Of a DNA stretch of 64,000 bases, positions 1 to 51,175 are shown in pieces. The translations under genes were made by a program, and so were the position numbers. Positions within the stretch are counted from its first letter, which is position 1; every line of letters starts with the position of its first letter. Under the pieces are notes generated by a model that was not told the DNA's origin, did not search any database, and saw nothing but the letters and a program-made list of their open reading frames with translations. Source of the stretch: Botryllus schlosseri (lineage: Eukaryota); NCBI GenBank assembly GCA_051294905.1, contig CM119372.1:6758001-6822000 (forward strand), read 5' to 3'.

Positions 1-114
1 CATCACTACGACCACTGAAACTTCAGTTGCATTTGTTGGAATACGCCACATGAACCTTGGCGACCACTGTAAATGCCAGGCCTTAGTTGAAGAAACATGG
101 CAAACGATATTTAC

Positions 115-27957: not shown

Positions 27958-28247
27958 TTACATGTCTTACGACGCTAGACTGCACCTAATACCTAAATTT
28001 CCAGTTGCAATATCACAGACAGACAGACATTTATTGCTTCGCAAAACATAAAAATTCCACTGGAGGTGACGATATGGCCTATAAGATGTCTAATGCCGTC
28101 AGTAACTCAAAGAGAACAAATAGCGATCATTATATTTGTAAATTTATTTCACGCCGATGATCGGAATTTATAATAACAAGCTTCAATGTAAGCTCAATCC
28201 ACTGAAATAGCACCGCGATACCACAATCAGTTGACTAGCATTAGCAC

Positions 28248-28642
28248 TAGGGCTGGGCAAAATCGAGTAGGCCTACATGAGTGATTCGATTCGGAATCAC
28301 ATATTATGCTTCTTGTCGATTAGCACTCATTATGACGTCACAACAAAATATAATGTGTCAAAGTTCAAATATGTACCTTTTGTGGATGTCATTACATTTA
28401 TGACAATGTTGTGGGAGGTTCATGACTTCGGAAATGTTTTTCCAGCAACGGTCGTAGCATTGTTCTATGTTTCATATGCTGCGATACGGACAATCAAGAT
28501 TTCAAGGCTTTATCAGTGAAAAATAGTATCGAAACCATATTTCTATTTGATAAAATAACTTTCAGTATCGAGGAGCGTATAATTTCAGTGCTCGAAAAAA
28601 TCGTATTTTGCTACTCGACTCGAATCATTGTGCCCAGCCCTA
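28248..28642. mobile_element. hAT MITE family C (TAGGGCTGGGCA TIR), copy 1
   Basis: TAGGGCTGGGCA...TGCCCAGCCCTA; flanks ATTAGCAC / ATTACCAC (7/8, overlapping the last base). Homologous to 44747-45215 and 53292-53819. Confidence 0.85.
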
Positions 28643-29263
28643 TTACCACCACGAGTCTTTGCGCACATCGCGCATAATATATTCACTCAGCAATCTCTGT
28701 GAGAGCGAATTGAACCCACGGCTAAGGAAAATGATTAGATCCATTATAGCCTACGTAACTGCAATTACCACGCTTCGGTTCCATGTTTTGACTAGACGCG
28801 AGGTAGCTCGTCGTTGAGCCTAACGTAACGCTACTGCTTTGGAGCCGAAAATCCAACGTGGAACAGGTGAATAATCACGTCTGGCTGGCGCAAAAACGCG
28901 AAGGGATTGTTTCTTAGTCAGAGACGCTATAGAGTATAGACTTACACCGCAGGTTATCGAAATATTCGAACCCATGTCGAACAAGATTAAATGCTTACAC
29001 ATGCCGCCGCCACCTGTATTTCAACAGACAGTGAACCACACTAATTCCTAGATACAATTGGACAGGATAGGATATAAATCGTTACTCATTTCTACTGTTC
29101 TGTTTTCATTACGCATACAGGTTACATCGAGAGAAACCGCGACTAAATTGATGGCAGAATTCACGAAATCGCATTCCCATGGCAAAAGCCGTCCACCGCG
29201 CCCAGGTTGCGGCAAGAAAATCCACGAGGCATCACAGATTCCGCCGTTACTTCCCTTCAAACC

Positions 29264-32200
29264 TCACACACCTGGTATTTGACTGACGCCTATACCTATG
29301 ATGATGACCAACAACACCGTGCAGCATATAATCACGCAGATCTTTTTCTGTAAAGGAGATGGAAAGGTTCTATAACGGTACAATGCGTCAGCACCTGACC
29401 AAGTGACCAACCACCAAATGTCCATATCGCAGGCAAACAACAAACACGACGACGCATGCGACAAGGAACTTACGCAACAGAATACAACCGCGTCCTAATT
29501 TACACCTTTCTGGGAACATAGGCGTCGTAATCACGTCAACTCTATGAGTGACTAGCGATCGCAAAAGCAGTTCTTGCGAATGCAGCTTGGAAGCCCGGTT
29601 GAAATCTAACCTTAACTCGCAGATATAGTTTAGACAGAAAATAGCAGGAAACGGTGTAATCAAAATGATTAGATTTTCACTCTTACGGAATCGAAACGAC
29701 CGCTTTCGATAGAATAGGAAACATATGATAATGGTGACATCCCTTGAAGAAATATACATACTTGAAACATACACAATACGATTCCAACTACGTACTAAAT
29801 GAATACAAGCAATATCACCGCGAAACTGGTATTGAAAGAATGAAATTGCACCGCACCGGTCCTACAAAGGAACGTGTAGATAATGGTAAGTCGCATACGG
29901 CAAAGAAGATGCAAGCAGTAGAGAAGGCCGGTATTTGCCTAAAAACTTGACGAGCCAAGAACATCATATCACATATAGCCTATCTATATAATAATACTTT
30001 TGGCATTGCAAACATAACAACCCGAAGATACCGGAAAACGAATATATAGTATATATAGAACCTCAGTAGATATACATCTCGCGTGTTAGAGCAATATACC
30101 TTTGATTAGGACAGTGATTAGTGCCACATCAAACCAGGCCGTCTACAAAATTTCCAGAATCAATAGAGACTGAATTAAGACAGCTTATGTTGAGGGTTGG
30201 CCCGAGTCCCGGGGCATTGGATAAGGACAATAAATATACATTAAACACCCGTCCAATCCAACATTTTCGAAAAGGAATGAACAAATAAGGAAAAAAAGGG
30301 AATTAATTTCACTATACTGTATTTGTATGGGTAAAAAATTAATGCTTCTTAAAACAAATCAAATGTTATTGAGACAGACAGCAGCAACTCGGCTCCATAA
30401 CGACCATCGTCATTTTGCAATTGCCACGAATCGTCGCGACGTTCGCATGAAACTTGCTGAAAAAATAAACTCTTACCGTTTAAGCTCTCACACGTGAAAT
30501 AGATGTGCGACTTACCACTGCCTGATCATGTCAACGTGGTGGCCAAAACAATAACAAGCACAGCAACCAAAATGACAACACACACAATGATAATAATTTG
30601 TTTCTGAAAAAGAAAAGATGAAAGTTAGTCGACGAAGTTTACGAACACCCGTAGGCGCATAACATCATTGCACATGACATACAACGGCCACGATTGAAGT
30701 GCAATGCAAGAGAAATGGCTTACAAGAGGCAATGTGGTAAAGTGCAGTTGTTGAAATAATCCGGAAAACCAGCTCGAACCAGCATAGTATTGCAAGTACG
30801 CAACTGGGAGTAAGTAATCTTCATTCAGATGTTTTCTGTAAGCCAACGGTTTTCAACCTTGGGGCCGGTTTTTTTTTTAGTAATCAGATATCCAAATAGG
30901 GCGGAGGTATGGGCGAAGGCTTTTTAGGTAATCAGGTCACCAAATTTAGAGATGGTCTGCGGATACGGAAATTGGGTCGCGACCAAAAAAGATTGGGAAC
31001 AACTTCTGTACACAATGGCGCTCAAAAAGACAGATGTCATTATAGGCGTGACTTTAACTACACATCAACGAGTTACGACTACCTTCAGATGATTACTAAC
31101 ACATATACCACCCCTACCGCTTGAGATATGGCGATCAAGGAGGTGATACAGACATGGGTGACATCAATTCGTTAGACCATCAGGCCGTGACACTCAAATC
31201 TGTTAGTGTGGAGAGGAAAGAAACTAACACTTTTTTAAAAGTGTTTTTCTAGTTTCCAGTGGCTTTTGTTGTGAAGTTCTTGCACTTCCGACATCTACAG
31301 TTGAAGAAAACCTGTTTCGGATTTTGTCAAGTAGCATTACTTTATGAGCAAAATCGTAATAAGGATTGACAAATATCACCTATGAATCATGATTCACGAT
31401 CACATACTATAGCTGGGCCTATTTGGCGATTAGTGCCGTAGGTGCACCATTTAAAATAGAGCAGAGCGGCCTCAATAAGTACCTACACCTTAGCGAGTGC
31501 ATTTTAAACATTCCAGTCATAGTAATAGATGGCAAGTCTCGCTATGAAACGATTACACGAATGTTCCGTTCAACCAGCATCTACGAACTAACTATTTCCG
31601 AACGGACCCGCGATCCAATTAGACTTCGAGAATCGCCATTGCAATTACCATTCACAAACATTGACGGGCTATTATTCACCAGTGCTTGCGATCAGGTCAC
31701 TAACTTCGAGTCAAGCCAAGTAATTTTGAAACTTTTCTGATCAAGTCAGACAGATTTCGAAAGTGACTCGAGTGCAGTGAAGCCATCTTAAATTGACCTA
31801 TTTCAAGTCAATTTCAAATGATGGCTCGGGTCATCCTAACAAGATAGACCGATCTAGTGTAACATTCATTTACGCGTCAAAATCAAATGTAGTCAGCGAT
31901 GGGTGTTAGAGCTTTTCCCGCAATTTCAACAACAACCACATCAAAAGGTCATTACTAATTTCATTATTTGACAAAGACCAAAAATCATACGCAATGAAGA
32001 AATTTAATAGCATACACCATGTCAACATTACACTTAGCTAGAAAGAATCAACGGACTGGTCCTGTCGTGTTAGTGTCATATTCCAAATGCAGAAAGGCTC
32101 ACTCACATGCATTCCAACAAAACATCTCGACGATGATGAAAAATATTTTCATCTTCGCATTGTAAGTACAGCTAAGTAACCCACACAGGATATCTCGGAC

Positions 32201-35200
32201 GGATTCAGCAAACGAGAAATCAAAAAAGACAGAAAGACAGATGACTTTCAGCCATAGGAAAAGATCATGACTTAAGTTTCGTGCAAGATTTGAAATGCAC
32301 AACGGATGCCTTTGCACTCCATTCAAGCATGTCACTTACCTTTTTTAACATTTCCCCCCTTGGCAACCAACACCGACACCAACGCCGATGGCTATTGCCA
32401 AAATTATAATAATAATAACGGCACAGATGATTTGTTTCTGCGGAAAAAACGTTGTGTAAGCACAGATGCCAGATTGCTTCAGCTCACAAAATTCGTAGCT
32501 TGCTTGGCAAACGACTCAATACACCGGCAGTACCCTGATTGATTCCGTCAGTTAAACTACGCATACCCTGCAAGAGCATCATAAAAAGTTTTGCACAAAC
32601 CGATATCACCTTGATCCTTCGCTTTGCTGAACCTACGCAGCTGCGCGTTCCGAACTGACGACAAAATACCTGCGCCAAACCTGACTGAACGACGCTTAAA
32701 TCCAACACACGCACATCGACTCATGCAGGTCGTGACATTGGGTGCCGCACGCTACCAAATCCTAGACACTTATCGACAGGTAACCGGACCTGACTTTGCA
32801 CACGAAGACACTCTGGCGTTCACTGTTTACCCCGCTCACAACAACATACTTTACGAACATCTACCGACGTACACATGCACATCACATCGATCATCTCACC
32901 CGTCTTGCTCTGCTCTGATACTTGACAGCCTTTTTAGTATCCGAAACAGCCCTCTCTACATAGTCAACTGAATGATCCACATTATACTCGATTCTATCGA
33001 TCATTTCGCCCTGTTGGGTTCCGAGTCGTTGCCAAGCAAAGGGGTGTAAAATAATTATAAGTGGTACGTGGGTAGCACGTCAAGCGCCCCCCGCATCCAC
33101 TCTCACCAAAGCACGAACTGGCGCCAAGAAATCGCCAGCCCTTCGATGGGGTTTGCGTAAGGAGCGTAGATTTTGTGTTGACCCAGTCGGAAATGAGCGC
33201 TCAAAATTGTTCATTTTTGGGTGTTACATGCCGCGGGCAGTACCTTTCTCGCCTTGCTTTGATATTTGACGGCCTGATTAGTATTTTCTTTAGCGTCTTC
33301 GACATAATCTGCAGCAATCGAGACATTATGCTCAATGCGATTGATCATTTCCCCCTGCAAAAGAGAAGGCAAGTTTTACGGACTTGATGTGTGATCGTTC
33401 CTGTTACGAACGTGTAAGTGGGATGCACACCAACACAAATTGGACAGCCGTTCATCAGTTCACATAATGATGAATAGTTACCAAAGACGTAAGCCTACTC
33501 AAAAATCAAATAGAAAATAATCCAGACCGATGGGTGCATAAAACATGATGTTCTGACTTTGACAAATGTTCAAGCGGATTGAAAGGGAGTAGGTCCGTCA
33601 AGTGTGCATGGCATTGCAGGTAAACTTTACAGTAAGGAAGCTGTCTCAGGCCTGAAAAAAATGAGTCTTCGAAACAGTGGGACATGGCAGTGCCATTTTC
33701 AAAATTCCGGGATTTCATCAGTCAAAAATTGGTTCATAGGCCTGAAGGGATGCAGTCTTTTGACAATGTGAAATGAATTGGAATCTTTCAAAACCCAGCC
33801 TTCACAGAAAAGTATTCTATGCTTCGCTAATTTGAATTTCACAAACAATTTGATTTGATGTTTGCAGGGACTTGGACACGTTTGTCGGGAGGTAGCTGTA
33901 CTGCAGCGACAAGAGAAAATGTAATTGTGGTGAATTTGATCTAGTGCAGGGATTCTTCAACTTTTTTGCTCCGTGACCCCGTTTTAGAAGTCAAATTTCT
34001 ACACGACCCCTGCCTACATGCATGTGAATGATAGATTGCCAATTGTCCTATTAATAGGAAACGATTTATAAAATAACAGAGGTCGTCAAACAAGATGGGG
34101 GCATTTGATGAATCATTCGATTCAATCAGAAGTCATGGACTTCAGTGACGTAAATATGGCTTGCCCAAAAAATGACACAAACTTAACCCGGCTATCTAAT
34201 AGGCAAACTGTCATTGCAATGTTGGAAGTAGCTTGCCAGATCTGACACCGACATTTCAATCCTGCCAGTATACTATTCATCCAAGCACTGGATTGGCGAC
34301 GGATAATGCTTCACAACGAATATTTATTTCATCAGTTCATTCGAGGCCGTGACCCACAGTTTGAGAAGCCCTGATCAAGTGCATGAAGTATGTCAAAATT
34401 ATATTAGTAGCTTGTTTTTCAATCACATTACAACAGACAACCTGCTTATATTATGGCAGTATTAGTATGTAAATGCGATATTGGTGACACAACAATGAAT
34501 CTTATATATGCTACTGTATCAATAGAATTACAATGCAAGGATGATCTCGTGAGAATGATGCAGAGTGATTCATTTACACCAACATTTAAACATACCTACA
34601 CAAGTATAAAACAACAAATGACCGACATGTATGTTGCAACTAAACGTCGTTTCGCCATGCCTTCATTAGTGCACACATTTACTGGAATTCCAATTGCCAG
34701 AATGGTTACGAGAAAAATTTCGGATACAAATGTCGTGCGGTTGTCCACTTTTTATGTTTAAGAATGCTACAACAGGAAACAGTGTCTCAATGTGCTGTAT
34801 TCACAATCACACCGCCTTAGAAAATCCGATTGATTCTACAAACATGCACACTGTGTCGACTAAGGACGACACGTACACTGCACAAGTACATTTATTATTC
34901 ACCTGGGTCAACATCCGCATTGATAAATAGCAGCAGTCAACTCGAGCAGCGATAATAACAAAATAAAAGACGTAGATAAATTAGAGTTGGACGATTACTG
35001 GATTCAAATTTGCCTTTCGAAAGGTTCATCCGATTATAGTCAGGGCAAAATTAGTTATTGATTCGTCATGAAATAACGGTTGTTACGAGTATGCCGCGCT
35101 CCCAGTGCAAACAAACGATAGAAATTGATAAGTTTTGACTTCACCCCAATACTGAGCTAGTATACATGTTTCACTCGCGTATTCGAGCAGTGGCTCTCAA

Positions 35201-38200
35201 CCTTTTTACAGATGCTGCCCGAATTTCGAATTCGAAAATGTGCCGTGAATCACTGTTAAACCAAGAAAATCAGCAGGCCTAGATGGGAAGTTGATTACTA
35301 GGGCGATTTTTTACCTTAGAAAGAGAAGATTTTGAACTAAAAAATCACCTCGTGTATGTAAATTAGGTGTTTTCCCACATAATGTTAGAATTGTAGGCTA
35401 CTACTTATCTTCATTTCTGGTTGGAACTGTCTGTCCTTACGAAGTAGTTTGGCTTGAACAAACTTATTTGACTCAAAAACTGACAAATTTTCACATGAAA
35501 AAACTTAATTTTAACAAAATCTGGACCTATGAAGCATTCGAGTAGTTACATCAAGCATTATGGTAGAAATAATCAAAATTTGATAGAACAGAGTAGAGAG
35601 TGTCTGTCCTTACTAAGTAGCTTGCCAAGAAAGGAGAAAGAACGTTCAACAGCAGCAGTTGTTGGCTGGCAACAATTTTTCATCACGCGCTTCTTGATAT
35701 AAGAACCAATGCCCACGCAGTCTTGCTTCAGTTAGGATATTGCGGTATGTTCAGCATAACACTATCTCAACCTATTTGTTTCATTTGGCCGTTTATGATT
35801 CACAATGAGTCTACAACGGTAGGCCTATAAAGTAGGCTAAAAGCTGTAAGATGTCAAATGATAAGTCCACCAACAGTTCAAACATTTACGATGCGAGCAT
35901 AATGCAGGTGGCAAAAGAATTTTTACTTTGTGAACAATTTTGACAAAATTTTGACTTATTTTGACTTGTCAAAAAAATCGCCCTATCGGTTACTAAAAAA
36001 GGTCAGCGCCTTCGCTACTCCTACAAAAGGCAAATGACCCGCAGGTTGAAACCACTGCATTCAAGTAGCACGTCTAGCGGCATTTAGTCCCCGGGTGAAA
36101 TACAGAGAGGCATAAGGCAAGGTTACTACTAGGGATGGTGTGAACGTGAGGTTCACGTTCGCGTTCTGTGTGTGAACCTCGGAAATTTAGAGGTTCGCGT
36201 TCACAACAGAACCTTGGTAGGTTCTGCACTGTGAACCTTTTTCATATATTACAATTTTCACTTCATTACAACATCGTTGGTTCAAATTCATTGCATTTCA
36301 ACTGCAGGCCACTCTATGCATGGCGCTATAGGCATAAAAAATCAACACTAAACGAGCATGTACCTTGACAATCTCAAAAGTTTTACTTGCTTTGTTGCAA
36401 AAGTTTGCCCGAAATATCCAACTTTCCGTTTGTAAATATTTATGGACTCTCTGAGCTTGACCCACAATCACAAAACATCACGATCGAAACAAGCTACGTC
36501 GGCCTAGTCAGCGAATGATGCTTATTCAACTAATCAATCTAGCAGTCGTATGGGGTCAATCTTGACTTCATATGCTTACTGGATCATTAAAACAAAATCG
36601 GTGCGATTGAGGTGTTGGCTACTGCTGTATAACTTGTTAATGGGGTAATATCGGTAGCAAGTGACAAAAATTAACTACGTCCCTTCCTTCCGTTATATTC
36701 CCTGGTAAGACCTCGTCAAAATTGTTGGCAAAGCGACTGAAGATATTGATTTTATGAGATTATTATATCATTTGATAGCTCCAGTTGATACATTTGGCGA
36801 CGTTTAAAACGTCAATATGTATTTCAGCATTGTGACGTAATGCTGCCCGAATAGTCGCTAGGTATCGTGTACATTAATATAGGCTATCATTTCATTGAAG
36901 GGTAGGTTGGAATTAGCAATATGACGTCCCGTGACGTCATGAGGTTCACGTTCGTGTTCACACAGAACCTTTCAAAAAGGTTCGCGTTCACACGAACCTG
37001 AACCTTTTAGAGGTTCACACCATCCCTAGTTACTACCCTGTGAGGAACTTAAAACAGCTTTGGCGAGGATGGCTAGATAATCATTATCCGCAATGGGTCT
37101 GAAATCACACACATGGGCTTGCTTAAAATTCGAGATTTAGTTTCGAAACAAATCACATAACAAGACAGCACTGTATTGGGACGACTATGGGTAGCATACT
37201 GCGTGATTTGTGAATACAGTCAATACAGATGCAAATATTGCTTATATAAAGGATTAGCCAATAAGACTAAACAATTCAAGATTTATATTTAATATCATCG
37301 TGGAACTTTGCCTGGATAAGGCTGGGACAGGATGCATCTGTGTTGGGGAGACATACCTGCGATTTCTATCATATTTTGTAATCTAGATAAATACGTACCT
37401 GTTGTTCAACCAACATTGCCATATCCATGAACATGTCGTGGAGCTCTCGAATGCTATTTTCTAATTTGATGATGTCATTATGGCGTGCTTCTATATCGTT
37501 TAGTGCTTGTTTCGTTTGCTTAGTGTCCATTATGATCTGATGAAATAAACACAGGGGTATAAAAATTGATGGCCATAAATGCAGCATGTAAAATCAGACA
37601 ATTGAAGAGGCATATGGCACACATATGCAGAGTACATTTATGGGTATACAACATCCTCTTGAAGACTGCAAAAAACTAGGATACTAATGTAACAGAGCTT
37701 ATCCGTGAGTCAACACTTTACAGTGATAACGTGCAACAGAACGCAGATCTACTGTAGCCAACACATCTGGTGCCAAGAAAATAAATATGAATTTAATAGC
37801 AGTAATAGTATCTAGTATGTATGTGCCTACCTACTATTATGATTTGGGGATTTGTAGTGCTTGCACAAGCACACACACAGCGTAAAATCACTATGAGACC
37901 TAAGTGGATATTCCAAAAACAAACCTTGGCAACTGGGAATGTCGTTATTTGTAAGGCTGTGGTAAAATCACTAGGTATGGAAAGTCAAACTAACTGACAG
38001 GAACAACAGCATAATTATCATATCGAAATTCACAAATTATTATTATGTAGTGAACGGAACAGAAACATGAGAAGTCGAAAAATCAATTTGTATGCAAGTC
38101 ATTGCATATGAGTCCTGAAAACGGCTTTATGTGCGCTGTGGTTTCTAGCAACCAACGTAAATCCACAGCAACGTTTAGATATCCGACATTACCATCGGAA

Positions 38201-41200
38201 GAACATTGACTCAGGGCTTCCATGTCTTATTCACGCCTACTTCCTGATATCTTGATAATAGGCTACACTATCACAATATACCCATATAAGCAGGCCTGAT
38301 ACAATACAGGGTTACATCAAATCCATTTGGCAAGAGGAAAGAAAACAATACAATTTGTTTCATAGAGCTTCATATTCGTAAATTACAGTACCTTGTTCAT
38401 TCAATGTAAATGGAATGAGGGTAAAATTCTTTGCTTATTACGAAGAAATTAAATTTGACAAGTTATTATCGACAGTTGGTCCATCGAGCCAAATCTGTTC
38501 TATCATATAGTAATAGGCCACATGTCCCCACTAAGCAAGTAATCCCTTGGATATCTAGCACAGTGTGATACGATAATGATTCCACGATCATGCTTTACGC
38601 ATGCCTAGTTAGCGCAATACCTAGTTCAATATATGTGAGTATTCATATAACTGCATACAGTATCTTATTTTCATGTGCCAGTTCACAAGCATACAAGTAC
38701 ACGAGAACCTACCCCTCCAGTGAAAATTCCCGGATTATTGTCTTTATTTGTTTCGAGCATAGTTTCAATTTCATTGTCGGTGACTTGCTTCCCCGTGATC
38801 TCCAATTGCCGTTGGATTCTGGACTTGCAACGTTCCCGGTAGTCGTTTTGCGTCGTGTTGTACTCCGTCATTACTTCGATGAACATCCGCGACAATGTCG
38901 AGTGCTGCGAAAGACAGTTACAGAGACTCCGGTGAAATCAAACCCTGGATTTCCCACGCAGACACAGTAGACCTCAGAGAACCTCACTATTGAAAGTAGA
39001 TTATTTTCAGTCTCAGTTCCCGTAATGGAGACTTTAAACCAGGGTCGTAATGACTCCAGTCAGGATTTTTGGTGACTCGACTTGACTCGAGTCATTTTTT
39101 TAATTGCGTAAAATGATTCGACTCGACTCAAGTCAATTTGTGTATGGCTCGAACCAAGTCATATGACTCGAGACTATGACGGCCAAGACAAACATTTCAT
39201 TGTAACTTCGAAGAATAGTAAAGTGACCACGTTACCGGAATTTCGTCTGTCAGTCCTGACACTTGGAAAATAGGGCAAGAAACTGTTAGGACTGAGGAAA
39301 ATTAAGATATTATGAATGCGAGCCATTCTATATCACTCGAGCAGAGTTGGAAAAAGTGGGTTGAACCAGATTGAACTCAAGACTCAACAGTGGACATAAT
39401 GACTTGGACTCGGACTCGAGTCACAACACTACGACTCGGACTCGATCCTTTATTCACTGACTTGGACTTGACTCGTTGGCGAATTGAAAATGAATCGATT
39501 TGACTCGAGTCAAAACTATAAAAGTGAGATTGACTTGCGACTCGGAACCTTGTGACTTGGTTACAACCCTGCTTTCAACACTATTTTACGTGTAAAACAC
39601 AGATACCGTGTATATTGATTCAAGCTGCTCAATTCAATTCAATATTCTTTGCAAAAGATTGGACCTATAGGCTACAATGAATTCTGTGCCGCCCTTTTGG
39701 GAGAACGAATCACTACCGTACTTTACTGGGTATATGGACTTGGATATTAGAATACCGAATCATTCAGGAATTTGATCAGGAGCTTGAAGGAGCAGCATTA
39801 TATTTCCAAAACAGGACTTTGAGTACTAGCGAACTGTAAGACGTAGCGTTGATTTAGCTGCTGTAATTAACTGCCAGTGCAGATTGGACACTGGACGGTG
39901 ATGCGTAGCGATATGAGAATATTGGGTCGATGAAAGTCATACTCAAATCGAAAAGGCAACTGATTGGCATTGTGGAAATTGCTCTTGCCACTTGCGATCG
40001 CAATAATAAAATGCATTCATTTGTGATATCTGTGGCATGCAGACATAGCTGAGTACAGCATTTGCATAAAACAATCCGAGTCTGTACATGCAATTTCTAG
40101 AATTTTGTGGCATTACCCACAAATGGAAACCCCATAAAACCACAGATTGGGAATAATGTTTGTGTACATAACAACTCTAATGTTGGATACAAGCGTTGAA
40201 AAAACTAAAATAATGACAACTCAATATAAAATCATATACCTTCACTCCTCCTTAACCTTGAACGTATTTTCACAACAAACACTATGTTTACGGAAGACGC
40301 AAACAAACTAGGCGCTTTATCAGTTTAAGCAGCTTTTCTGTATGGGAATGTATTTTACTACCACAGTAGCAATCAGTTTTCCATAGTTGCTACTGGTCGT
40401 TCTATTTTTCATTTGAACATCTTAAAAGTTCTTGAATCTACCATTGTATATTAAATAAAGCTGGAACAGCTGATCATCTGCAGGAACATCTCTACACTCT
40501 GGGAGTACTTCGTTAGCGCTGTCAATCGGCTATGCGTTGTTACATGCCGTTGACCAGTCTTGACAACATAACTATTTTCATATCTCGAATTTGCTTAACC
40601 ACCATTACTGAAGTTTGCTCCTGATTAGAATCAGTCTAAAAGCTTCAGAGTGGAATAAATGTGGCATTACGAACTTGAACATATTGTTTGTTGTGATATT
40701 GGAAGTTTTGTACTTAGGCCTGCAGAAGCCTATTTTAATGTATTACTACAATTAAAACATACCTGGGTTCTCTTTATCCGCAAATCTGCGGGTGAGGATG
40801 TGGAGTTCTCATCTAACGACGCATCAATATTTTTCAACTTGTTTCGAACTTTATTTGCATTCGTCTTGATCTGTGCCATCAAGTTCTCTAATTCTTCTTT
40901 GGTCCCTATGATTGAATTAACAAAGGTTTAAGAAATGTTAAATAAATAGTGTCAAGACGAATACTTCAAATTGCAGCATAGCAACAATTCTCAGATGGAG
41001 AATTGCAATCCATGAGAATCGTAGGAAAAGGTAAGAACAGTAGGCTATATTTTAACAATTTTTAATCCATACAATTCCCAATGTATTCGTTTCGAATTTT
41101 ACAATACAAAGACTAAAAAATAAAATATGTTTTATTCTTGATTGTGTATAGCGTTGAGCACTGAACGCTGACACCCAATCTGAGAAAAAATAGAAATATA

Positions 41201-47200: not shown

Positions 47201-50200
47201 TAGATTTGTTTGGTCAAAATCTTCCGTTTTTAGGTTAAAAAAAATTGCCCTAGTGATCACCAATAACTAATATTGCCAGTTACATTCGATCAAAAATGAA
47301 TTAAAATTCGTCAACACTAACTATGGCATAGAAACCTGTGACATTACTGCATGTCGATAGCTACTCCACAGAAATGCCATTTGCACGACTGCACGAGCAC
47401 TGAGCATGTGTAGCTTTGCTGTACTGTACAATTGCACATGTATTCAATGACATAAGAAAATCGAGCTTTTGAGGTGGGGTGGTGAGAAGTTAACAACGAA
47501 ACAAATATTCTCATTGATAAAACGCCCCTAGTGACAAGGGGTCTACAATTTTGGTACTCAACAACATCAACTCTTGACTACCCGCCTCAAATCACAAAAA
47601 ATAATTCTTGATTCGGAATTGACTACCACTTATTCAATTCGTTATGCCCAGCCCTACTAACTATGAATGTTGGAATCCTATGGTGACCCTGCCCCGACAA
47701 GGCGCGTTCCCTTGGTTAATATGTTCTCGAGGAAAGTCAAGAATTCACTACGGGTGTGAGCAAACTCCACAGGAGAGTGGCGTAAATGATGCCAGCGTTA
47801 TCAGGTTAATCCTGATATAGTAGTGACATCATTGCCTTGAAGTTCAAGTGATAATATAGAGGTAGGACAGGTCTGATTGCACATCCATCAAAGCAATACG
47901 TAGAGTGATTTTTGTCAAAAACCAATAAAGGCTTTTGGGTGCAAAGCATTATATCATTGTACATTCATTTTGATATTTTGTAGCCTGCAGTGCAGTGAAA
48001 ATATTTCATGAAATATACTGGACTTTGAGTGGTCTCTAAAATACTTCCAAGATGACAATCAGGTTATCCGGGGAAAGATATAAACTTTATAATACCAAAT
48101 TTTTAGCAACAGAATACAGCAGTAGTCCTTGCATTTGTATAGTTACACCGAAACCAGCTTTCAGTTCAGTTACCCAATAGGCTGCTGAATAATTAGTTTT
48201 GTAGGATGCCAAACATTGACAATCATATCTGTGACTTATGAGTAACCACAAGTAAGTTGATCAATATCAGTCAAGCCATCTATGACTGCTAAAGATTATA
48301 TTCATAAGTCTTTGATGGCTCATGGGGATGATGACTGGATTAACATCAGAAGCCACTAAACTTGGCTAGCATATTCCAGGAGTGCACATATTCCAGGAGT
48401 GCACACTATTCTTTTACTATTCAGCATGATTAAAATGTTGGGTAGAATGAGTATCACAGTGACTTGACCAAAACTGCCAGTGCCTTGTGTACAGGTGTAC
48501 ATATGGAGCTGCTTGAAATACAACCGAGAACTACCAGTACCGTTGAAAACACACTCCACTGATACTCTATCCTTAGCGCAGGTAGCCAGCCATGAAAAAT
48601 TGATGACAATGATAGATAGACTTGCCATTGCCATACATCAAAGTGGCAGGAAGTATTGCAACATCAAAACACACATTGATGTGGCTCTCAGACAGTGTGA
48701 CTTTGAAATCTGTACCGAAGAAATCTATAGGACTACGGTATACTTACGGTCATCTGCTTGTGGAGCAGAGAGGATTTCGCTATGCTTTCGTTTTACATCT
48801 TTGACACACGCTTCTATCTTGTCAATATAACCTTTGATTTCCTCCACCTTCAGTTGATCAAAAATATATTAGTAAGTCCAACAAATATTCAAATTCAAGT
48901 TCATGTTAAGAGAGCGATGACCTGTTTGGCGTTTAATTGCATAAGATAAGAAATACAATCTGGATATCAACGTAACGACGGAGAGATTAATGTAAAATAT
49001 CAAAGTTAGATGCACAAAATCAAAATGAGCAGTTCCTAAGATGAAATCGCGTTTCACAAACTGTATCTACTATTCTTCATTAACAGTGGCGATCATCAGT
49101 CATCCAACACCCAAGACTCGTATTTTACCACTAGTGACATAAAGTCTATGAAGCAGGTACCACGAAAGTAAGCAAGGAAGAAAAATGAACATTCATCGAA
49201 TATCTTGAAATGCAGTAATCGGATAATAATGCAACAAATCATGAATCGATGGTATGACACTACCATTTCACTAGAGCAGCGGTTCTTAACCAGGGGTCCA
49301 CGGACTATCAAATCAGGGGTACGAAATGCAGTGTGGAATTATACGCTGTTGCAGGACCAAAATTATTTTGCAAAGTAGATTATTATCGAGCGATTTCTTC
49401 AACTCGAAAATTTTAATTTCATTTCAAGACAGGTAGGCCTATTGCCTTCAATCTGGGTACCTCCGAAAAAAAGAATAGTATCGGTAGTCTAATAATTGGC
49501 TGTAGGGGTGCTTTAGTCCAGGGGTAGGAAACCTGCTGCGTGACTGCGTGACTAACAGAGACATGTAAATTGGGAACGAGAAACATTTCATGACAGCTCA
49601 AGGGTTACAAGCATTAAAGGTTAGGAAACACTGCACTAGAGGGAAGAAACACTTTCCCCATTAATAAAATTCATCAACTGGGAGTAAACAGTCATACTGA
49701 CCTGTGCAAAAAAATCATCGAGCTCATTCCGCTCCATGGCAATTGTAGTGGCTTCATCCTCGTTGTCATCTTCACCGCTGATGGAGGCTTGCTGCCATGC
49801 AAAAATAAAATGGATAAATCCATCAATTCTATCAAAACATAAAAATCTAGTCCTAGTAGCAAAAGGTGATCAATGCAGTGACAAATATGACTGTTAGGAA
49901 ATGCAGCGAGAAAACGCTACAAACTTGGGTGTGGACTTATATCAAGTAGAGGTTGGTTGTGTCAGTGAAAAGTAACCTGGGCACAAAACTAATAATGATG
50001 AAATGGGATGAATGCCACATACAAAGTTGCCTATAATGCAAACATTTTCTATTCTTCAGTTTCGAATACCGATTCATTCCAATTCCAACACTCACACGTG
50101 AATGTTTTAGATTCTTCAGGATTAGGCTACTGAATGTTCATGCCATTTTTCAACAATATATAATATAACTGTGTGAGCTGTAAAGCTTATGCTACTGCGA

Positions 50201-51175
50201 TACATCATGTAGTGCTAAAACATGATACAAAAATGTTATTGCCAGCAATTTGATGCTTGAATTACAAAATCAATCAATAGAAGATGAATTACAGAAAAAA
50301 ATTTGCATAATTTATTGATGCCAAAACTTCAAAGCCTATCAATATTGCATGATCCCACGAACAATGTATGTGTGTATTTTGTGTAACTGAATCCAACCGG
50401 TAATCCTAATACTTACACATATCTTGTGTTTTATCACAGCTACTACCTTAAAATGTTTACGAATTTACGAACACCCCAGACAGGACCCATAGGCTATACC
50501 ATTACTCCTAAAAGGAGTCTGTCATATGAAACGACAAACCAATCCTGGCAGACATAGGACAGCATCGAACATGGCAGAAAGGATGTGCTGTAAGAGCATT
50601 TGGATTCAGATATTGACAGTAATTTCCTTTCTAGTAGGCCCAGACATTACAAAATCAATTGAGATTTAATAAGCTATTTGTCCTACTCATACTTGGAATC
50701 CTCTGTAAATGTAAAAATCTTTTTGAAACGCTTCACAAAGTTCTAATATCTAGTACAGCACAACTGATTGAAAAAGGTTATCAAAAGTACAATCACAATG
50801 AACATTAGGAATGGGTACAACAAAGCAGTCTAGGATATATTTTTGAAGAGATTGAAAACCTACTAAGACTCTCATCAGAAACTACAATTAGGTTGATTAG
50901 AACCAGGGTGCCTGGTGAATCCCATATGGGTGTATTCAGACGTCCAACCACGACAACATCCTCAACAAACAGTCAAACACATGTTGTCACGGTATAGACC
51001 TGGCTAGTTTTCACAGCCAGTAACATGACAAAATAGGCTATGTACCCTACACATAAAAATTGTATCACTTGTCAAAGGTCGTCGTTGACATTTTGTTACC
51101 ATGGCTGTGTAAAGCTGGCTGTGACAGTTTATGTTGATTACTCACTTGCTTGAGCTCGCTAAATCGATCTCTCAT
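29264..51175 (-). CDS. STX1: Syntaxin-1 (plasma-membrane Qa-SNARE)
   Basis: Exons: 51146-51175 ([10 protein letters not shown]), 49702-49791 (..ELDDFFAQ), 48748-48847 ([26 protein letters not shown]), 40763-40905 ([18 protein letters not shown]), 38713-38904 ([30 protein letters not shown]..), 37399-37536 ([35 protein letters not shown]), 33244-33354 ([21 protein letters not shown]), and terminal 29264-29347 ([27 protein letters not shown]). Total 295 aa, in frame. Confidence 0.95.
30516..30603 (-). CDS. STX1: Syntaxin alternative TM exon B
   Basis: Acceptor CTTTTCTTTTTCAG, phase 0, encoding [25 protein letters not shown] (stop 30526-30528). Donor GTAAGT follows 10 nt after the stop. Confidence 0.85.
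32340..32437 (-). CDS. STX1: Syntaxin alternative TM exon A
   Basis: Acceptor TTTTTTCCGCAG, phase 0, encoding [30 protein letters not shown] (stop 32345-32347). Donor GTAAGT follows 5 nt after the stop. Confidence 0.85.
33947..34373. mobile_element. Charlie-like hAT MITE
   Basis: CAGGGATTCTTCAAC / TTTGAGAAGCCCTG; TSD ATCTAGTG / ATCAAGTG (7/8). Confidence 0.75.
35188..36057. mobile_element. Charlie-like MITE interrupted by a family B element
   Basis: CAGTGGCTCTCAACC / GGTTGAAACCACTG; flanks TATTCGAG / CATTCAAG (6/8). It contains 35299-35985. Confidence 0.7.
35299..35985 (-). mobile_element. hAT family B (TAGGGCGATTTTTT TIR) deletion derivative, copy 1 (inverted)
   Basis: TIRs TAGGGCGATTTTTT / AAAAAAATCGCCCTA; flanks TTGATTAC / TCGGTTAC (6/8). 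The interior is the reverse complement of 46393-47252. Confidence 0.85.
36130..37028. mobile_element. hAT MITE family E
   Basis: Perfect 16-bp TIR TAGGGATGGTGTGAAC, perfect 8-bp TSD GTTACTAC, and subterminal GAACC/GTTCAC repeats. Confidence 0.92.
39040..39571. mobile_element. hAT MITE family D (GACTCGAGTC-rich), copy 1
   Basis: CAGGGTCGTAA / TTACAACCCTG; TSD CTTTAAAC / CTTTCAAC (7/8). It is an inverted homolog of 58147-58801. Confidence 0.88.
42503..43639 (+). mobile_element. hAT family B copy 2, containing a nested Charlie MITE
   Basis: TAGGGCGATTTTTT / AAAAAAATCGCCCTA; internal transposase remnant (..[27 protein letters not shown]..); left flank GTCATCAC. Confidence 0.85.
42777..43076. 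mobile_element. Charlie-like MITE nested in family B copy 2
   Basis: CAGGGGTTCTCAACC / GGTTGAGAACCACTG with perfect 8-bp TSD TCCTAACT. Confidence 0.92.
44747..45215. mobile_element. hAT MITE family C, copy 2 (inverted)
   Basis: TAGGGCTGGGCA...TGCCCAGCCCTA. The interior is the reverse complement of 53292-53819. The TSD is not clean. Confidence 0.85.
46393..47252 (+). mobile_element. hAT family B copy 3
   Basis: Perfect palindromic 8-bp TSD GTGATCAC on both sides; right TIR AAAAAAATTGCCCTA; degenerate left TIR. Confidence 0.88.
46702..46953 (+). pseudogene. Remnant of the hAT transposase C-terminal (dimerization) region
   Basis: ORF ..[38 protein letters not shown].. carries the hAT C-terminal S/T-x-x-x-ERSFS motif. 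It lies inside TIR-bounded element 46393-47252 and has no catalytic core. Confidence 0.75.
49277..49633. mobile_element. Charlie-like hAT MITE
   Basis: CAGCGGTTCTTAACC / GGTTAGGAAACACTG; perfect TSD CACTAGAG. Confidence 0.88.

What the first reader, a model, noticed from the sequence alone, without database searches (positions are those of the whole stretch)
29264..33354. Syntaxin-1 with three stacked alternative transmembrane exons, two built as stop-containing cassettes
Seen: after ...KARK, three phase-0 exons offer [57 protein letters not shown], and [29 protein letters not shown] and B each have a GTAAGT donor 5 or 10 nt past the stop, so downstream TM exons can become 3' UTR. Established: alternative C-termini occur in vertebrate STX2/STX3 and C. 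elegans unc-64. In STX1A the KARRKK polybasic patch binds PIP2 and the TM CC pair is palmitoylated. Inference: only C keeps the full basic patch and the CC pair. A adds a luminal Cys pair. One gene may thus cover roles split among vertebrate STX1/2/3.
Basis: partly seen in the sequence, partly recalled or inferred. Interest (0 to 1): 0.7.

Follow-up and report, generated by a model that had tools for sequence, protein, structure and literature searches.

The report
Sea-squirt syntaxin gene with modular tail
A sea-squirt syntaxin-1-type gene really carries three alternative membrane-anchor exons, plus an overlooked pair of alternative SNARE exons. Worm, fish and mammal syntaxin genes are already known to be built this way, so it is a solid but unsurprising new example.

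Summary
On the minus strand, three phase-0 exons at 32437, 30603 and 29347 each encode a basic start, a hydrophobic anchor and a stop. They are the only such exons in the 64-kb window, and 30 shuffled windows gave none.

RNA reads show anchor B joined to the exon ending at 33244 (30 junction reads in one bulk run). B is the main form.

The GTAAGT after B's stop is a real donor. It removes a 59-base intron in the 3' UTR (30515-30457) and does not splice to anchor C. A processed retrocopy elsewhere in the genome preserves both junctions.

Use of C is suggested: one assembled RNA piece stops at C's acceptor, and there is a distal poly(A) peak. Use of A has only about ten single-cell reads behind it.

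It matches the vertebrate syntaxin-1 exon at 35 of 37 residues. Joined to C it would give RARRKK plus a Cys-Cys pair. That pairing is inferred, not shown.

Two of three other tunicate-like genomes keep the twin exons. None shows three anchors.

Worm unc-64 and vertebrate STX2 and STX3 are the documented precedents. Fish stx1a and arthropod gene models show the same twin exons. I class this as a new member of a known kind.

The parts
51146..51175 (-). exon 1: start codon and N-peptide ([10 protein letters not shown])
   Evidence: sequence and GTGAGT donor; 5' UTR and exon 1 are also present in the retrocopy
49702..49791 (-). exon 2
48748..48847 (-). exon 3 (Habc helix A), ends in phase 1
40763..40905 (-). 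exon 4
   Evidence: weak Pfam Syntaxin hit, below the curated cut-off
38713..38904 (-). exon 5 (Syntaxin domain)
   Evidence: Pfam PF00804, E 1.3e-16; 764 relatives
37399..37536 (-). exon 6: N-terminal half of the SNARE motif, ends ...VEQQ (zero-layer Gln)
   Evidence: unique in the genome
33244..33354 (-). exon 7a: C-terminal half of the SNARE motif, ends KARK; the form seen in bulk RNA
   Evidence: Pfam SNARE, E 6e-11; junction 33244->30603 with 30 reads in X23, 1 read in X21 and one X1 contig
32900..33010 (-). exon 7b: twin of 7a with the same length and phase; ends RARR; syntaxin-1 type
   Evidence: AG acceptor and GTGAGA donor; Pfam SNARE, E 3.9e-14; 35/37 identical to the vertebrate STX1 exon; about 3 single-cell reads
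32874..32879 (-). UGCAUG (Rbfox-type motif) 21 bases downstream of the 7b donor; a second copy at 32727-32722
   Evidence: window density is 0.53 per kb; the regulatory role is inferred
32340..32437 (-). anchor exon A (stop at 32347-32345), followed by GTAAGT at 32339-32334
   Evidence: sense single-cell reads at depth 2-2.6 only between 32427 and 32034
32003..32008 (-). ATTAAA, candidate poly(A) signal for an A-terminated transcript
   Evidence: the read cluster stops just upstream of it
30516..30603 (-). anchor exon B (stop at 30528-30526), an internal exon
   Evidence: junctions 33244->30603 and 30516->30456; both are preserved in the retrocopy
30457..30515 (-). 59-base GT..AG intron in the 3' UTR of the B transcript
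   Evidence: 21 reads in X23, plus 10 reads of a one-base variant, 1 read in X21 and contigs in X1 and X3; absent from the retrocopy
29712..30456 (-). 3' UTR exon of the B transcript
   Evidence: X23 depth falls from about 25 to about 1 below roughly 29670; retrocopy homology ends at 29712
29264..29347 (-). anchor exon C (KKI..IICC type) with stop
   Evidence: X3 contig 29139-29348 stops at the acceptor and X3 has no cover over 29349-29599
28030..29263 (-). 3' UTR after C, down to the AATAAA signals at 28148 and 28035
   Evidence: X3 contigs 28607-29348; single-cell 3' peak at 28094-28290, depth 16.8; signals

Best explanation
This is the only canonical plasma-membrane syntaxin gene (syntaxin-1/2/3 type) found in a sea-squirt genome. 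Its 3' end is modular. After the exon that ends at the zero-layer glutamine, the transcript takes one of two alternative 111-base exons for the C-terminal half of the SNARE motif (7a or 7b). It then takes one of three alternative anchor exons (A, B or C).

Shown: 7a joined to B is the main mRNA in the runs examined. B is an internal exon whose stop is followed by a donor. That donor removes a 59-base intron and joins a dedicated 3' UTR exon ending near 29712.

Inferred from conservation: 7b is functional and is the syntaxin-1-type neuronal version.

Inferred from a contig boundary and a distal poly(A) peak: C is a real terminal exon used at lower level. Some B transcripts also read through C as a long 3' UTR.

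Inferred from sequence logic only: 7b pairs with C and gives the RARRKK patch plus Cys-Cys site that syntaxin-1A needs for palmitoylation.

A is probably a rare terminal exon with its own short 3' UTR. This is the weakest part.
For: Gene model and family.

The three anchor exons are not chance.

7a->B junction: 30 reads in X23, 1 in X21 and an X1 contig. 59-base UTR intron: 21 reads (plus 10 of a one-base variant) in X23, 1 in X21, and contigs in X1 and X3.

An independent fossil: a processed retrocopy on another contig of the genome carries exon 1, exon 2, 7a, B and the UTR with the 59-base intron already removed. Its homology stops at 29712. Reads do not carry the retrocopy-specific bases, so they come from the parent gene.

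7b: correct splice sites, 35/37 identical to vertebrate STX1, while 7a is 24/37. The a/b twins stand in the same order in two other tunicate-like genomes.

C: the X3 contig ends at 29348 with no X3 cover over the 250 bases upstream. A distal single-cell 3' peak sits at 28094-28290, next to AATAAA. The one listed variant inside C (29311) is synonymous.

A: single-cell reads are confined to 32427-32034, between the acceptor and an ATTAAA.

A donor 7-21 bases past the anchor stop is present in all three other tunicate-like loci.

Only one canonical gene in the genome.
Against: No junction read to A or C, or from 7b, was listed. Bulk run X23 has depth 0 over A and over 7b, and only about 1 over C, no higher than the intron upstream of it. 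Only about 6% of X23 and 3% of X21 were read, and two joints were not displayed.

The X1 contig runs unspliced from 30456 to 28613, through C. At least part of the signal over C is therefore read-through.

Three other tunicate-like loci show one anchor exon each within 3-9 kb, so A and C are not conserved at that depth.

Protein searches with the A and C reading frames found nothing, though these were limited to proteins of 31-133 residues.

The 7b-C pairing has no direct evidence. The few 7b reads in 3'-biased data would fit an A-terminated transcript equally well.
Confidence: 0.62

Rival explanations
1. Only 7a-B is a working mRNA. A and C, and perhaps 7b, are unused relics of old exon duplications. 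Signal over C is only read-through past B's poly(A) site.
For: There are no listed junctions to A or C. X23 depth over C equals the depth over the intron upstream of it. An X1 contig is continuous through C. A and C have no counterpart in three other tunicate-like loci.
Against: Open frames, acceptors and stops are all intact, although A, B and C share little DNA similarity, which suggests old duplications. The X3 contig ends at C's acceptor with a 250-base gap upstream. 7b is 35/37 identical to vertebrate STX1, which is not expected of an unused exon. This genome has no other canonical syntaxin-1 gene to supply a neuronal form.
Confidence: 0.17
2. One reading: A and B are stop-containing cassettes, and their donors splice to the next anchor exon, so downstream anchor exons become 3' UTR.
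For: Both exons have GTAAGT just past the stop. In human STX3 the anchor exon 10 is also an internal, skippable exon followed by exon 11 (bioRxiv 10.1101/162958).
Against: For B, every supported use of the donor goes to 30456, 59 bases away, not to 29347. The retrocopy shows the same junction. For A, no spliced read was seen. Splicing A to B would leave A's stop more than 55 bases upstream of the last junction, which by the usual rule for nonsense-mediated decay should destabilise the mRNA (inference).
Confidence: 0.06
3. 7a/7b and A/B/C combine freely, giving up to six isoforms, rather than in fixed pairs such as 7b-C.
For: All junctions are phase 0, so every combination is in frame. Fish stx1a gene models in the database show mixed combinations.
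Against: Only 7a-B was observed. Vertebrate STX3A and STX3B differ as whole blocks from layer 0 to the anchor (PMC9183232).
Confidence: 0.25

Closest known systems
C. elegans unc-64 (syntaxin-1 orthologue), alternative last exons 8a/8b
   Same: One syntaxin-1 gene has alternative exons that encode different C-terminal hydrophobic anchors. One is neuronal and one non-neuronal, under CELF/UNC-75 control, and the isoforms are not interchangeable (PMC4946901).
   Different: The worm varies only the anchor. No alternative SNARE half is described in that paper. Here there are twin SNARE exons as well, and tissue use is not yet known.
Vertebrate STX3A / STX3B
   Same: The isoforms are identical up to layer 0 of the SNARE motif and then differ in the C-terminal SNARE half, the juxtamembrane patch and the anchor. 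STX3B has TMD cysteines and STX3A has none (PMC9183232). The switch point here is the same (after ...VEQQ). The human STX3 anchor exon is internal and is followed by a further exon (10.1101/162958).
   Different: Vertebrates also have separate STX1A, STX1B and STX2 genes. This genome has one canonical gene with three anchors instead of two.
Vertebrate STX2 (epimorphin) isoforms
   Same: Two isoforms differ in the membrane anchor, with a CELF2 site in the intron upstream of the alternative exons (PMC4946901).
   Different: No twin SNARE exon is described for STX2 in that paper.
Fish stx1a and arthropod Syntaxin-1A gene models
   Same: Database models contain two tandem copies of the same 37-residue SNARE-half exon, or list many isoforms. 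Fish examples are Puntigrus, Sinocyclocheilus, Anguilla and Prochilodus. Arthropod examples are Armadillidium, Penaeus, Frankliniella and Macrobrachium. In fish the non-canonical copy comes first, as here.
   Different: These are automatic annotations, not studied isoforms. Whether the duplications are one ancient event or several was not resolved.

Membership tests
Plasma-membrane syntaxin (syntaxin-1/2/3 type, Qa SNARE) | Habc / Syntaxin N-terminal domain | tested here: met
   Pfam PF00804 on exon 5, 61 bits against a cut-off of 26.7
Plasma-membrane syntaxin (syntaxin-1/2/3 type, Qa SNARE) | SNARE motif with zero-layer glutamine | tested here: met
   Exon 6 ends ...VEQQ and is followed by GEMI.... 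Pfam PF05739 scores 42.6 bits on 7a and 52.8 bits on 7b
Plasma-membrane syntaxin (syntaxin-1/2/3 type, Qa SNARE) | C-terminal tail anchor preceded by basic residues | tested here: met
   Three alternative anchors
Plasma-membrane syntaxin (syntaxin-1/2/3 type, Qa SNARE) | High identity to syntaxin-1 over the full length | tested here: met
   58-61% identity for the 7a-B form and 62-67% for the 7b-C form against vertebrate syntaxin-1A
Alternative anchor exons as in unc-64, STX2 and STX3 | Several same-phase anchor exons, each with its own stop | tested here: met
Alternative anchor exons as in unc-64, STX2 and STX3 | Each anchor exon is seen spliced in RNA | tested here: inconclusive
   B: yes, 30 reads. 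C: only a contig boundary and a distal 3' peak. A: about ten single-cell reads and no junction
Alternative anchor exons as in unc-64, STX2 and STX3 | Tissue-specific choice (neuronal versus other) | not testable with these tools
   Run identities are coded and the single read-laying run was used
Mutually exclusive twin SNARE-half exons (STX3A/3B type) | Two homologous exons of equal length and phase directly after layer 0 | tested here: met
   Both are 111 bases and phase 0-0, 23/37 identical to each other, and both hit Pfam SNARE
Mutually exclusive twin SNARE-half exons (STX3A/3B type) | Both exons are used, never together | tested here: inconclusive
   7a->B reads skip 7b. Use of 7b rests on conservation and about 3 reads
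   B's donor joins 30456, 59 bases away. The donor behind A's stop could not be tested

The most novel reading that the evidence does not exclude
By coordinated exon choice, one sea-squirt gene makes two kinds of syntaxin. One is a syntaxin-1-like neuronal form (7b + C, with an RARRKK patch and a palmitoylatable Cys-Cys). The other kind is general STX2/3-like forms (7a + B or A). If so, the division of labour later fixed in the separate vertebrate STX1, STX2 and STX3 genes existed first as splicing in a single gene. Skipping B into its UTR exon could add a soluble form like human Stx3S.
Probability: 0.33. Interest if true: 0.55.

Novelty: new member of a known kind. Interest (0 to 1): 0.38.

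Why it matters
Tunicates are the closest living relatives of vertebrates. This genome has one canonical plasma-membrane syntaxin where vertebrates have STX1A, STX1B, STX2 and STX3. A single gene offering both a near-perfect syntaxin-1 SNARE half and a divergent one, with a choice of anchors, gives a simple system for two questions. The first is which C-terminal features make a syntaxin neuronal: the basic patch, the anchor cysteines or the SNARE half. The second is whether splicing-based specialisation came before gene duplication. The principle is already established in worms and mammals, so this extends known biology and does not change it.

Tried and rejected
1. Protein searches with the genomic reading frames around C and A, to catch short spliced fragments: no candidates. 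These searches see only proteins of about 31-133 residues, so the blanks say nothing about full-length isoforms.

2. A profile search seeded with window exons plus two fish syntaxins, meant to reach tunicate full-length proteins: the best 120 hits were all vertebrate or arthropod.

3. A search with the assembled full-length isoforms was left out.

4. Contigs for the closest exon-5 relatives (P0003, P0005, P0008) were under 1 kb and useless for exon order.

5. Searching the genome for other copies of A or C, hoping for retrocopies that fossilise their junctions: only the window itself matched.

6. Long-range RNA pairing that could enforce exclusive choice: only weak inverted repeats, 15-25 bases at 71-87%. 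Not pursued.

7. I asked whether the junction reads come from the retrocopy. This was rejected because retrocopy-specific bases are not among the read variants.

8. Paper searches for tunicate syntaxin splicing found nothing specific.

9. The Curtis 2008 STX3B paper is not held in the library.
Full report
**What is in the sequence**

The stretch lies at the 3' end of a minus-strand gene. The gene's exons run from 51175 down to about 28000. Exons 1-6 plus the exon 33354-33244 and any of the three anchor exons give an uninterrupted protein of 293-298 residues.

The protein has the parts expected of a plasma-membrane syntaxin:
- an N-peptide;
- a Syntaxin domain (Pfam PF00804, 61 bits);
- a SNARE motif (PF05739);
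- 58-65% identity to vertebrate syntaxin-1A.

I did not test that name. The closest relatives I could fetch share a three-residue insertion in exon 5 with this gene.

**Checking the observation**

Each exon follows a pyrimidine tract and an AG, and each starts in phase 0. GTAAGT stands 5 bases past A's stop and 10 bases past B's stop.

A mechanical scan of both strands of the whole window for anchor-type exons returns these three and nothing else. Thirty shuffled windows returned none.

Between 33244 and anchor A lies a second 111-base exon, 33010-32900. It has an AG acceptor, a GTGAGA donor and the same phase. It encodes the same part of the SNARE motif as 33354-33244. I call the two exons 7a and 7b.

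7b matches the vertebrate syntaxin-1 exon at 35 of 37 residues, and one fish copy at 36 of 37. 7a matches at only 24 of 37. 7b ends in RARR. Joined to C (KKI..IICC) it would recreate the syntaxin-1A juxtamembrane patch and Cys pair.

In mouse neurons, palmitoylation of C271/C272 depends on that basic patch (PMC9183232). With 7a the patch would read KARKKK.

**RNA evidence**

One read-laying run was available, on four runs.

*Anchor B.*
- In bulk RNA run X23, of which about 6% was read, 30 reads join 33244 to 30603. One single-cell read and one X1 contig show the same junction.
- 21 X23 reads join 30516 to 30456, a 59-base GT..AG intron. Ten more carry a one-base variant. One X21 read and contigs in X1 and X3 agree.
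- B is therefore the main anchor in these runs. Its GTAAGT is a real donor, and it feeds a dedicated 3' UTR exon, not anchor C.
- X23 depth stays at 19-32 (both mate directions summed) from B's exon to about 29670, then drops to about 1.

*Anchor C.*
- X23 gives only about 1-fold cover, no higher than over the intron upstream.
- X1 has a contig that runs unspliced from 30456 to 28613. Some B transcripts therefore read through C as a long UTR.
- In X3, a contig covers 29139-29348 and stops one base from C's acceptor. X3 has no cover over the 250 bases upstream. Depth over C and its UTR equals that over B's UTR.
- A contig end within a base of the acceptor is unlikely by chance, roughly 1-2% by my estimate. 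It fits a branch point of spliced forms.
- The 3'-biased single-cell run has a separate sense peak at 28094-28290, next to AATAAA at 28148 and 28035. Its depth is about 14% of B's peak.
- Together these suggest, but do not prove, that C is used.

*Anchor A.*
- X23 depth over A is 0.
- The single-cell run has roughly ten sense reads. They are confined to 32427-32034, between A's acceptor and an ATTAAA at 32008.
- This is the pattern expected of a rare terminal exon with a short UTR, but no junction was seen.

*Exon 7b.* About three single-cell reads fall on it, against about eleven on 7a and almost none in the flanking introns.

*A further single-cell peak at 29420-29560.* It stops before C. 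It is best explained as priming on the A-run at the start of C in unspliced RNA (inference).

**A genomic fossil**

Another contig of the same genome holds a processed copy of the mRNA. It contains:
- the 5' UTR, exon 1, exon 2 and the first 17 bases of exon 3;
- then the last 3 bases of exon 6, followed by 7a and B;
- then B's UTR with the 59-base intron already removed.

Homology ends at window position 29712. This independently confirms the 7a-B junction, the UTR intron and the poly(A) region of the B mRNA.

Bases specific to this copy do not appear among the read variants. The reads therefore come from the parent gene.

**Conservation**

The genome has one canonical gene of this type. Exon 6 matches only here, apart from a divergent intronless syntaxin. 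A and C have no other copy in the genome.

Three long contigs from other tunicate-like genomes carry the orthologous gene.

| Locus | Twin SNARE exons | Anchor exons found | Range searched past the anchor | Donor after the stop |
|---|---|---|---|---|
| L010/L015 | a-type then b-type, about 100 bases apart | one | 3 kb | 7 bases |
| L011 | a-type then b-type, about 100 bases apart | one | 6.6 kb | 21 bases |
| L012/L013/L016 | a-type only | one; its last 11 residues are identical to B | 8.8 kb | 13 bases |

From this I conclude:
- The twin SNARE exons are older than these lineages.
- B-type anchors with a 3' UTR intron are the conserved state.
- A and C are either lineage-specific additions or were lost elsewhere.

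Tandem twin exons also show up in fish stx1a and arthropod Syntaxin-1A gene models.

**How it most likely works**

After the shared N-terminal two thirds, the spliceosome picks 7a or 7b, then one anchor exon, each of which brings its own poly(A) site.
- Shown: 7a + B is the main product.
- Likely: 7b is the neuronal syntaxin-1 version. The grounds are extreme conservation, the lack of any other gene for that job, a weak pyrimidine tract typical of regulated exons, and UGCAUG motifs 21 and 173 bases downstream of its donor.
- Plausible but untested: 7b pairs with C.
- Also untested: A, as a third, rare ending.

**Comparison with what is known**
- Worm unc-64 makes neuronal and non-neuronal syntaxin by alternative anchor exons under CELF control (PMC4946901).
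- Mammalian STX2 does the same (PMC4946901).
- STX3A and STX3B differ from layer 0 through the anchor, the same switch point as here (PMC9183232).
- The human STX3 anchor exon is internal and skippable (10.1101/162958).

I found no paper on tunicate syntaxin splicing.

**Verdict**

The finding is real and tidy, but it is a new member of a known kind. It is still unproven.

Noticed in passing
L002:1123-1746 (minus strand; G000 contig C5 near 11.905 Mb): A processed retrocopy of the 7a-B mRNA lacks most of exons 3-6 but keeps an open 108-residue frame: N-peptide, half a SNARE motif and anchor B (Pfam SNARE, 43.8 bits). Six single-cell reads carry a flank resembling its 3' side, so it may be transcribed.
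   Followed up: partly
L004:1354-2445 (minus strand; G000 contig C6 near 27.058 Mb): An intronless, divergent syntaxin of 363 residues with Syntaxin and SNARE domains. Its SNARE half resembles 7a more than 7b, so it may be an old retrogene of a 7a-type transcript.
   Followed up: partly
window 28488-28684: A short, very high-copy repeat inside the presumed 3' UTR of C. Contig word depth is in the thousands in X1, with many loose ends and 'goes back' joints at 28618-28629.
   Followed up: no
window 30456-30352: If B were skipped (33244 joined to 30456), the frame would run on for 35 hydrophilic residues to a stop. That would be a possible soluble isoform like human Stx3S. No such junction was listed.
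   Followed up: no
window 29700-30460: All reads and contigs differ from the reference at 30414 and 30212, and the retrocopy agrees with the reads. Eight X23 reads carry an 18-base insertion near 30225 that the retrocopy also has. The assembled haplotype looks derived at these sites, and the region is highly polymorphic.
   Followed up: partly
L015:11790-13640: In a related species, the intron between exon 6 and the twin SNARE exons holds a 616-residue open frame with transposase-derived domains (DUF4371, ZBED5/FAM200-like).
   Followed up: no
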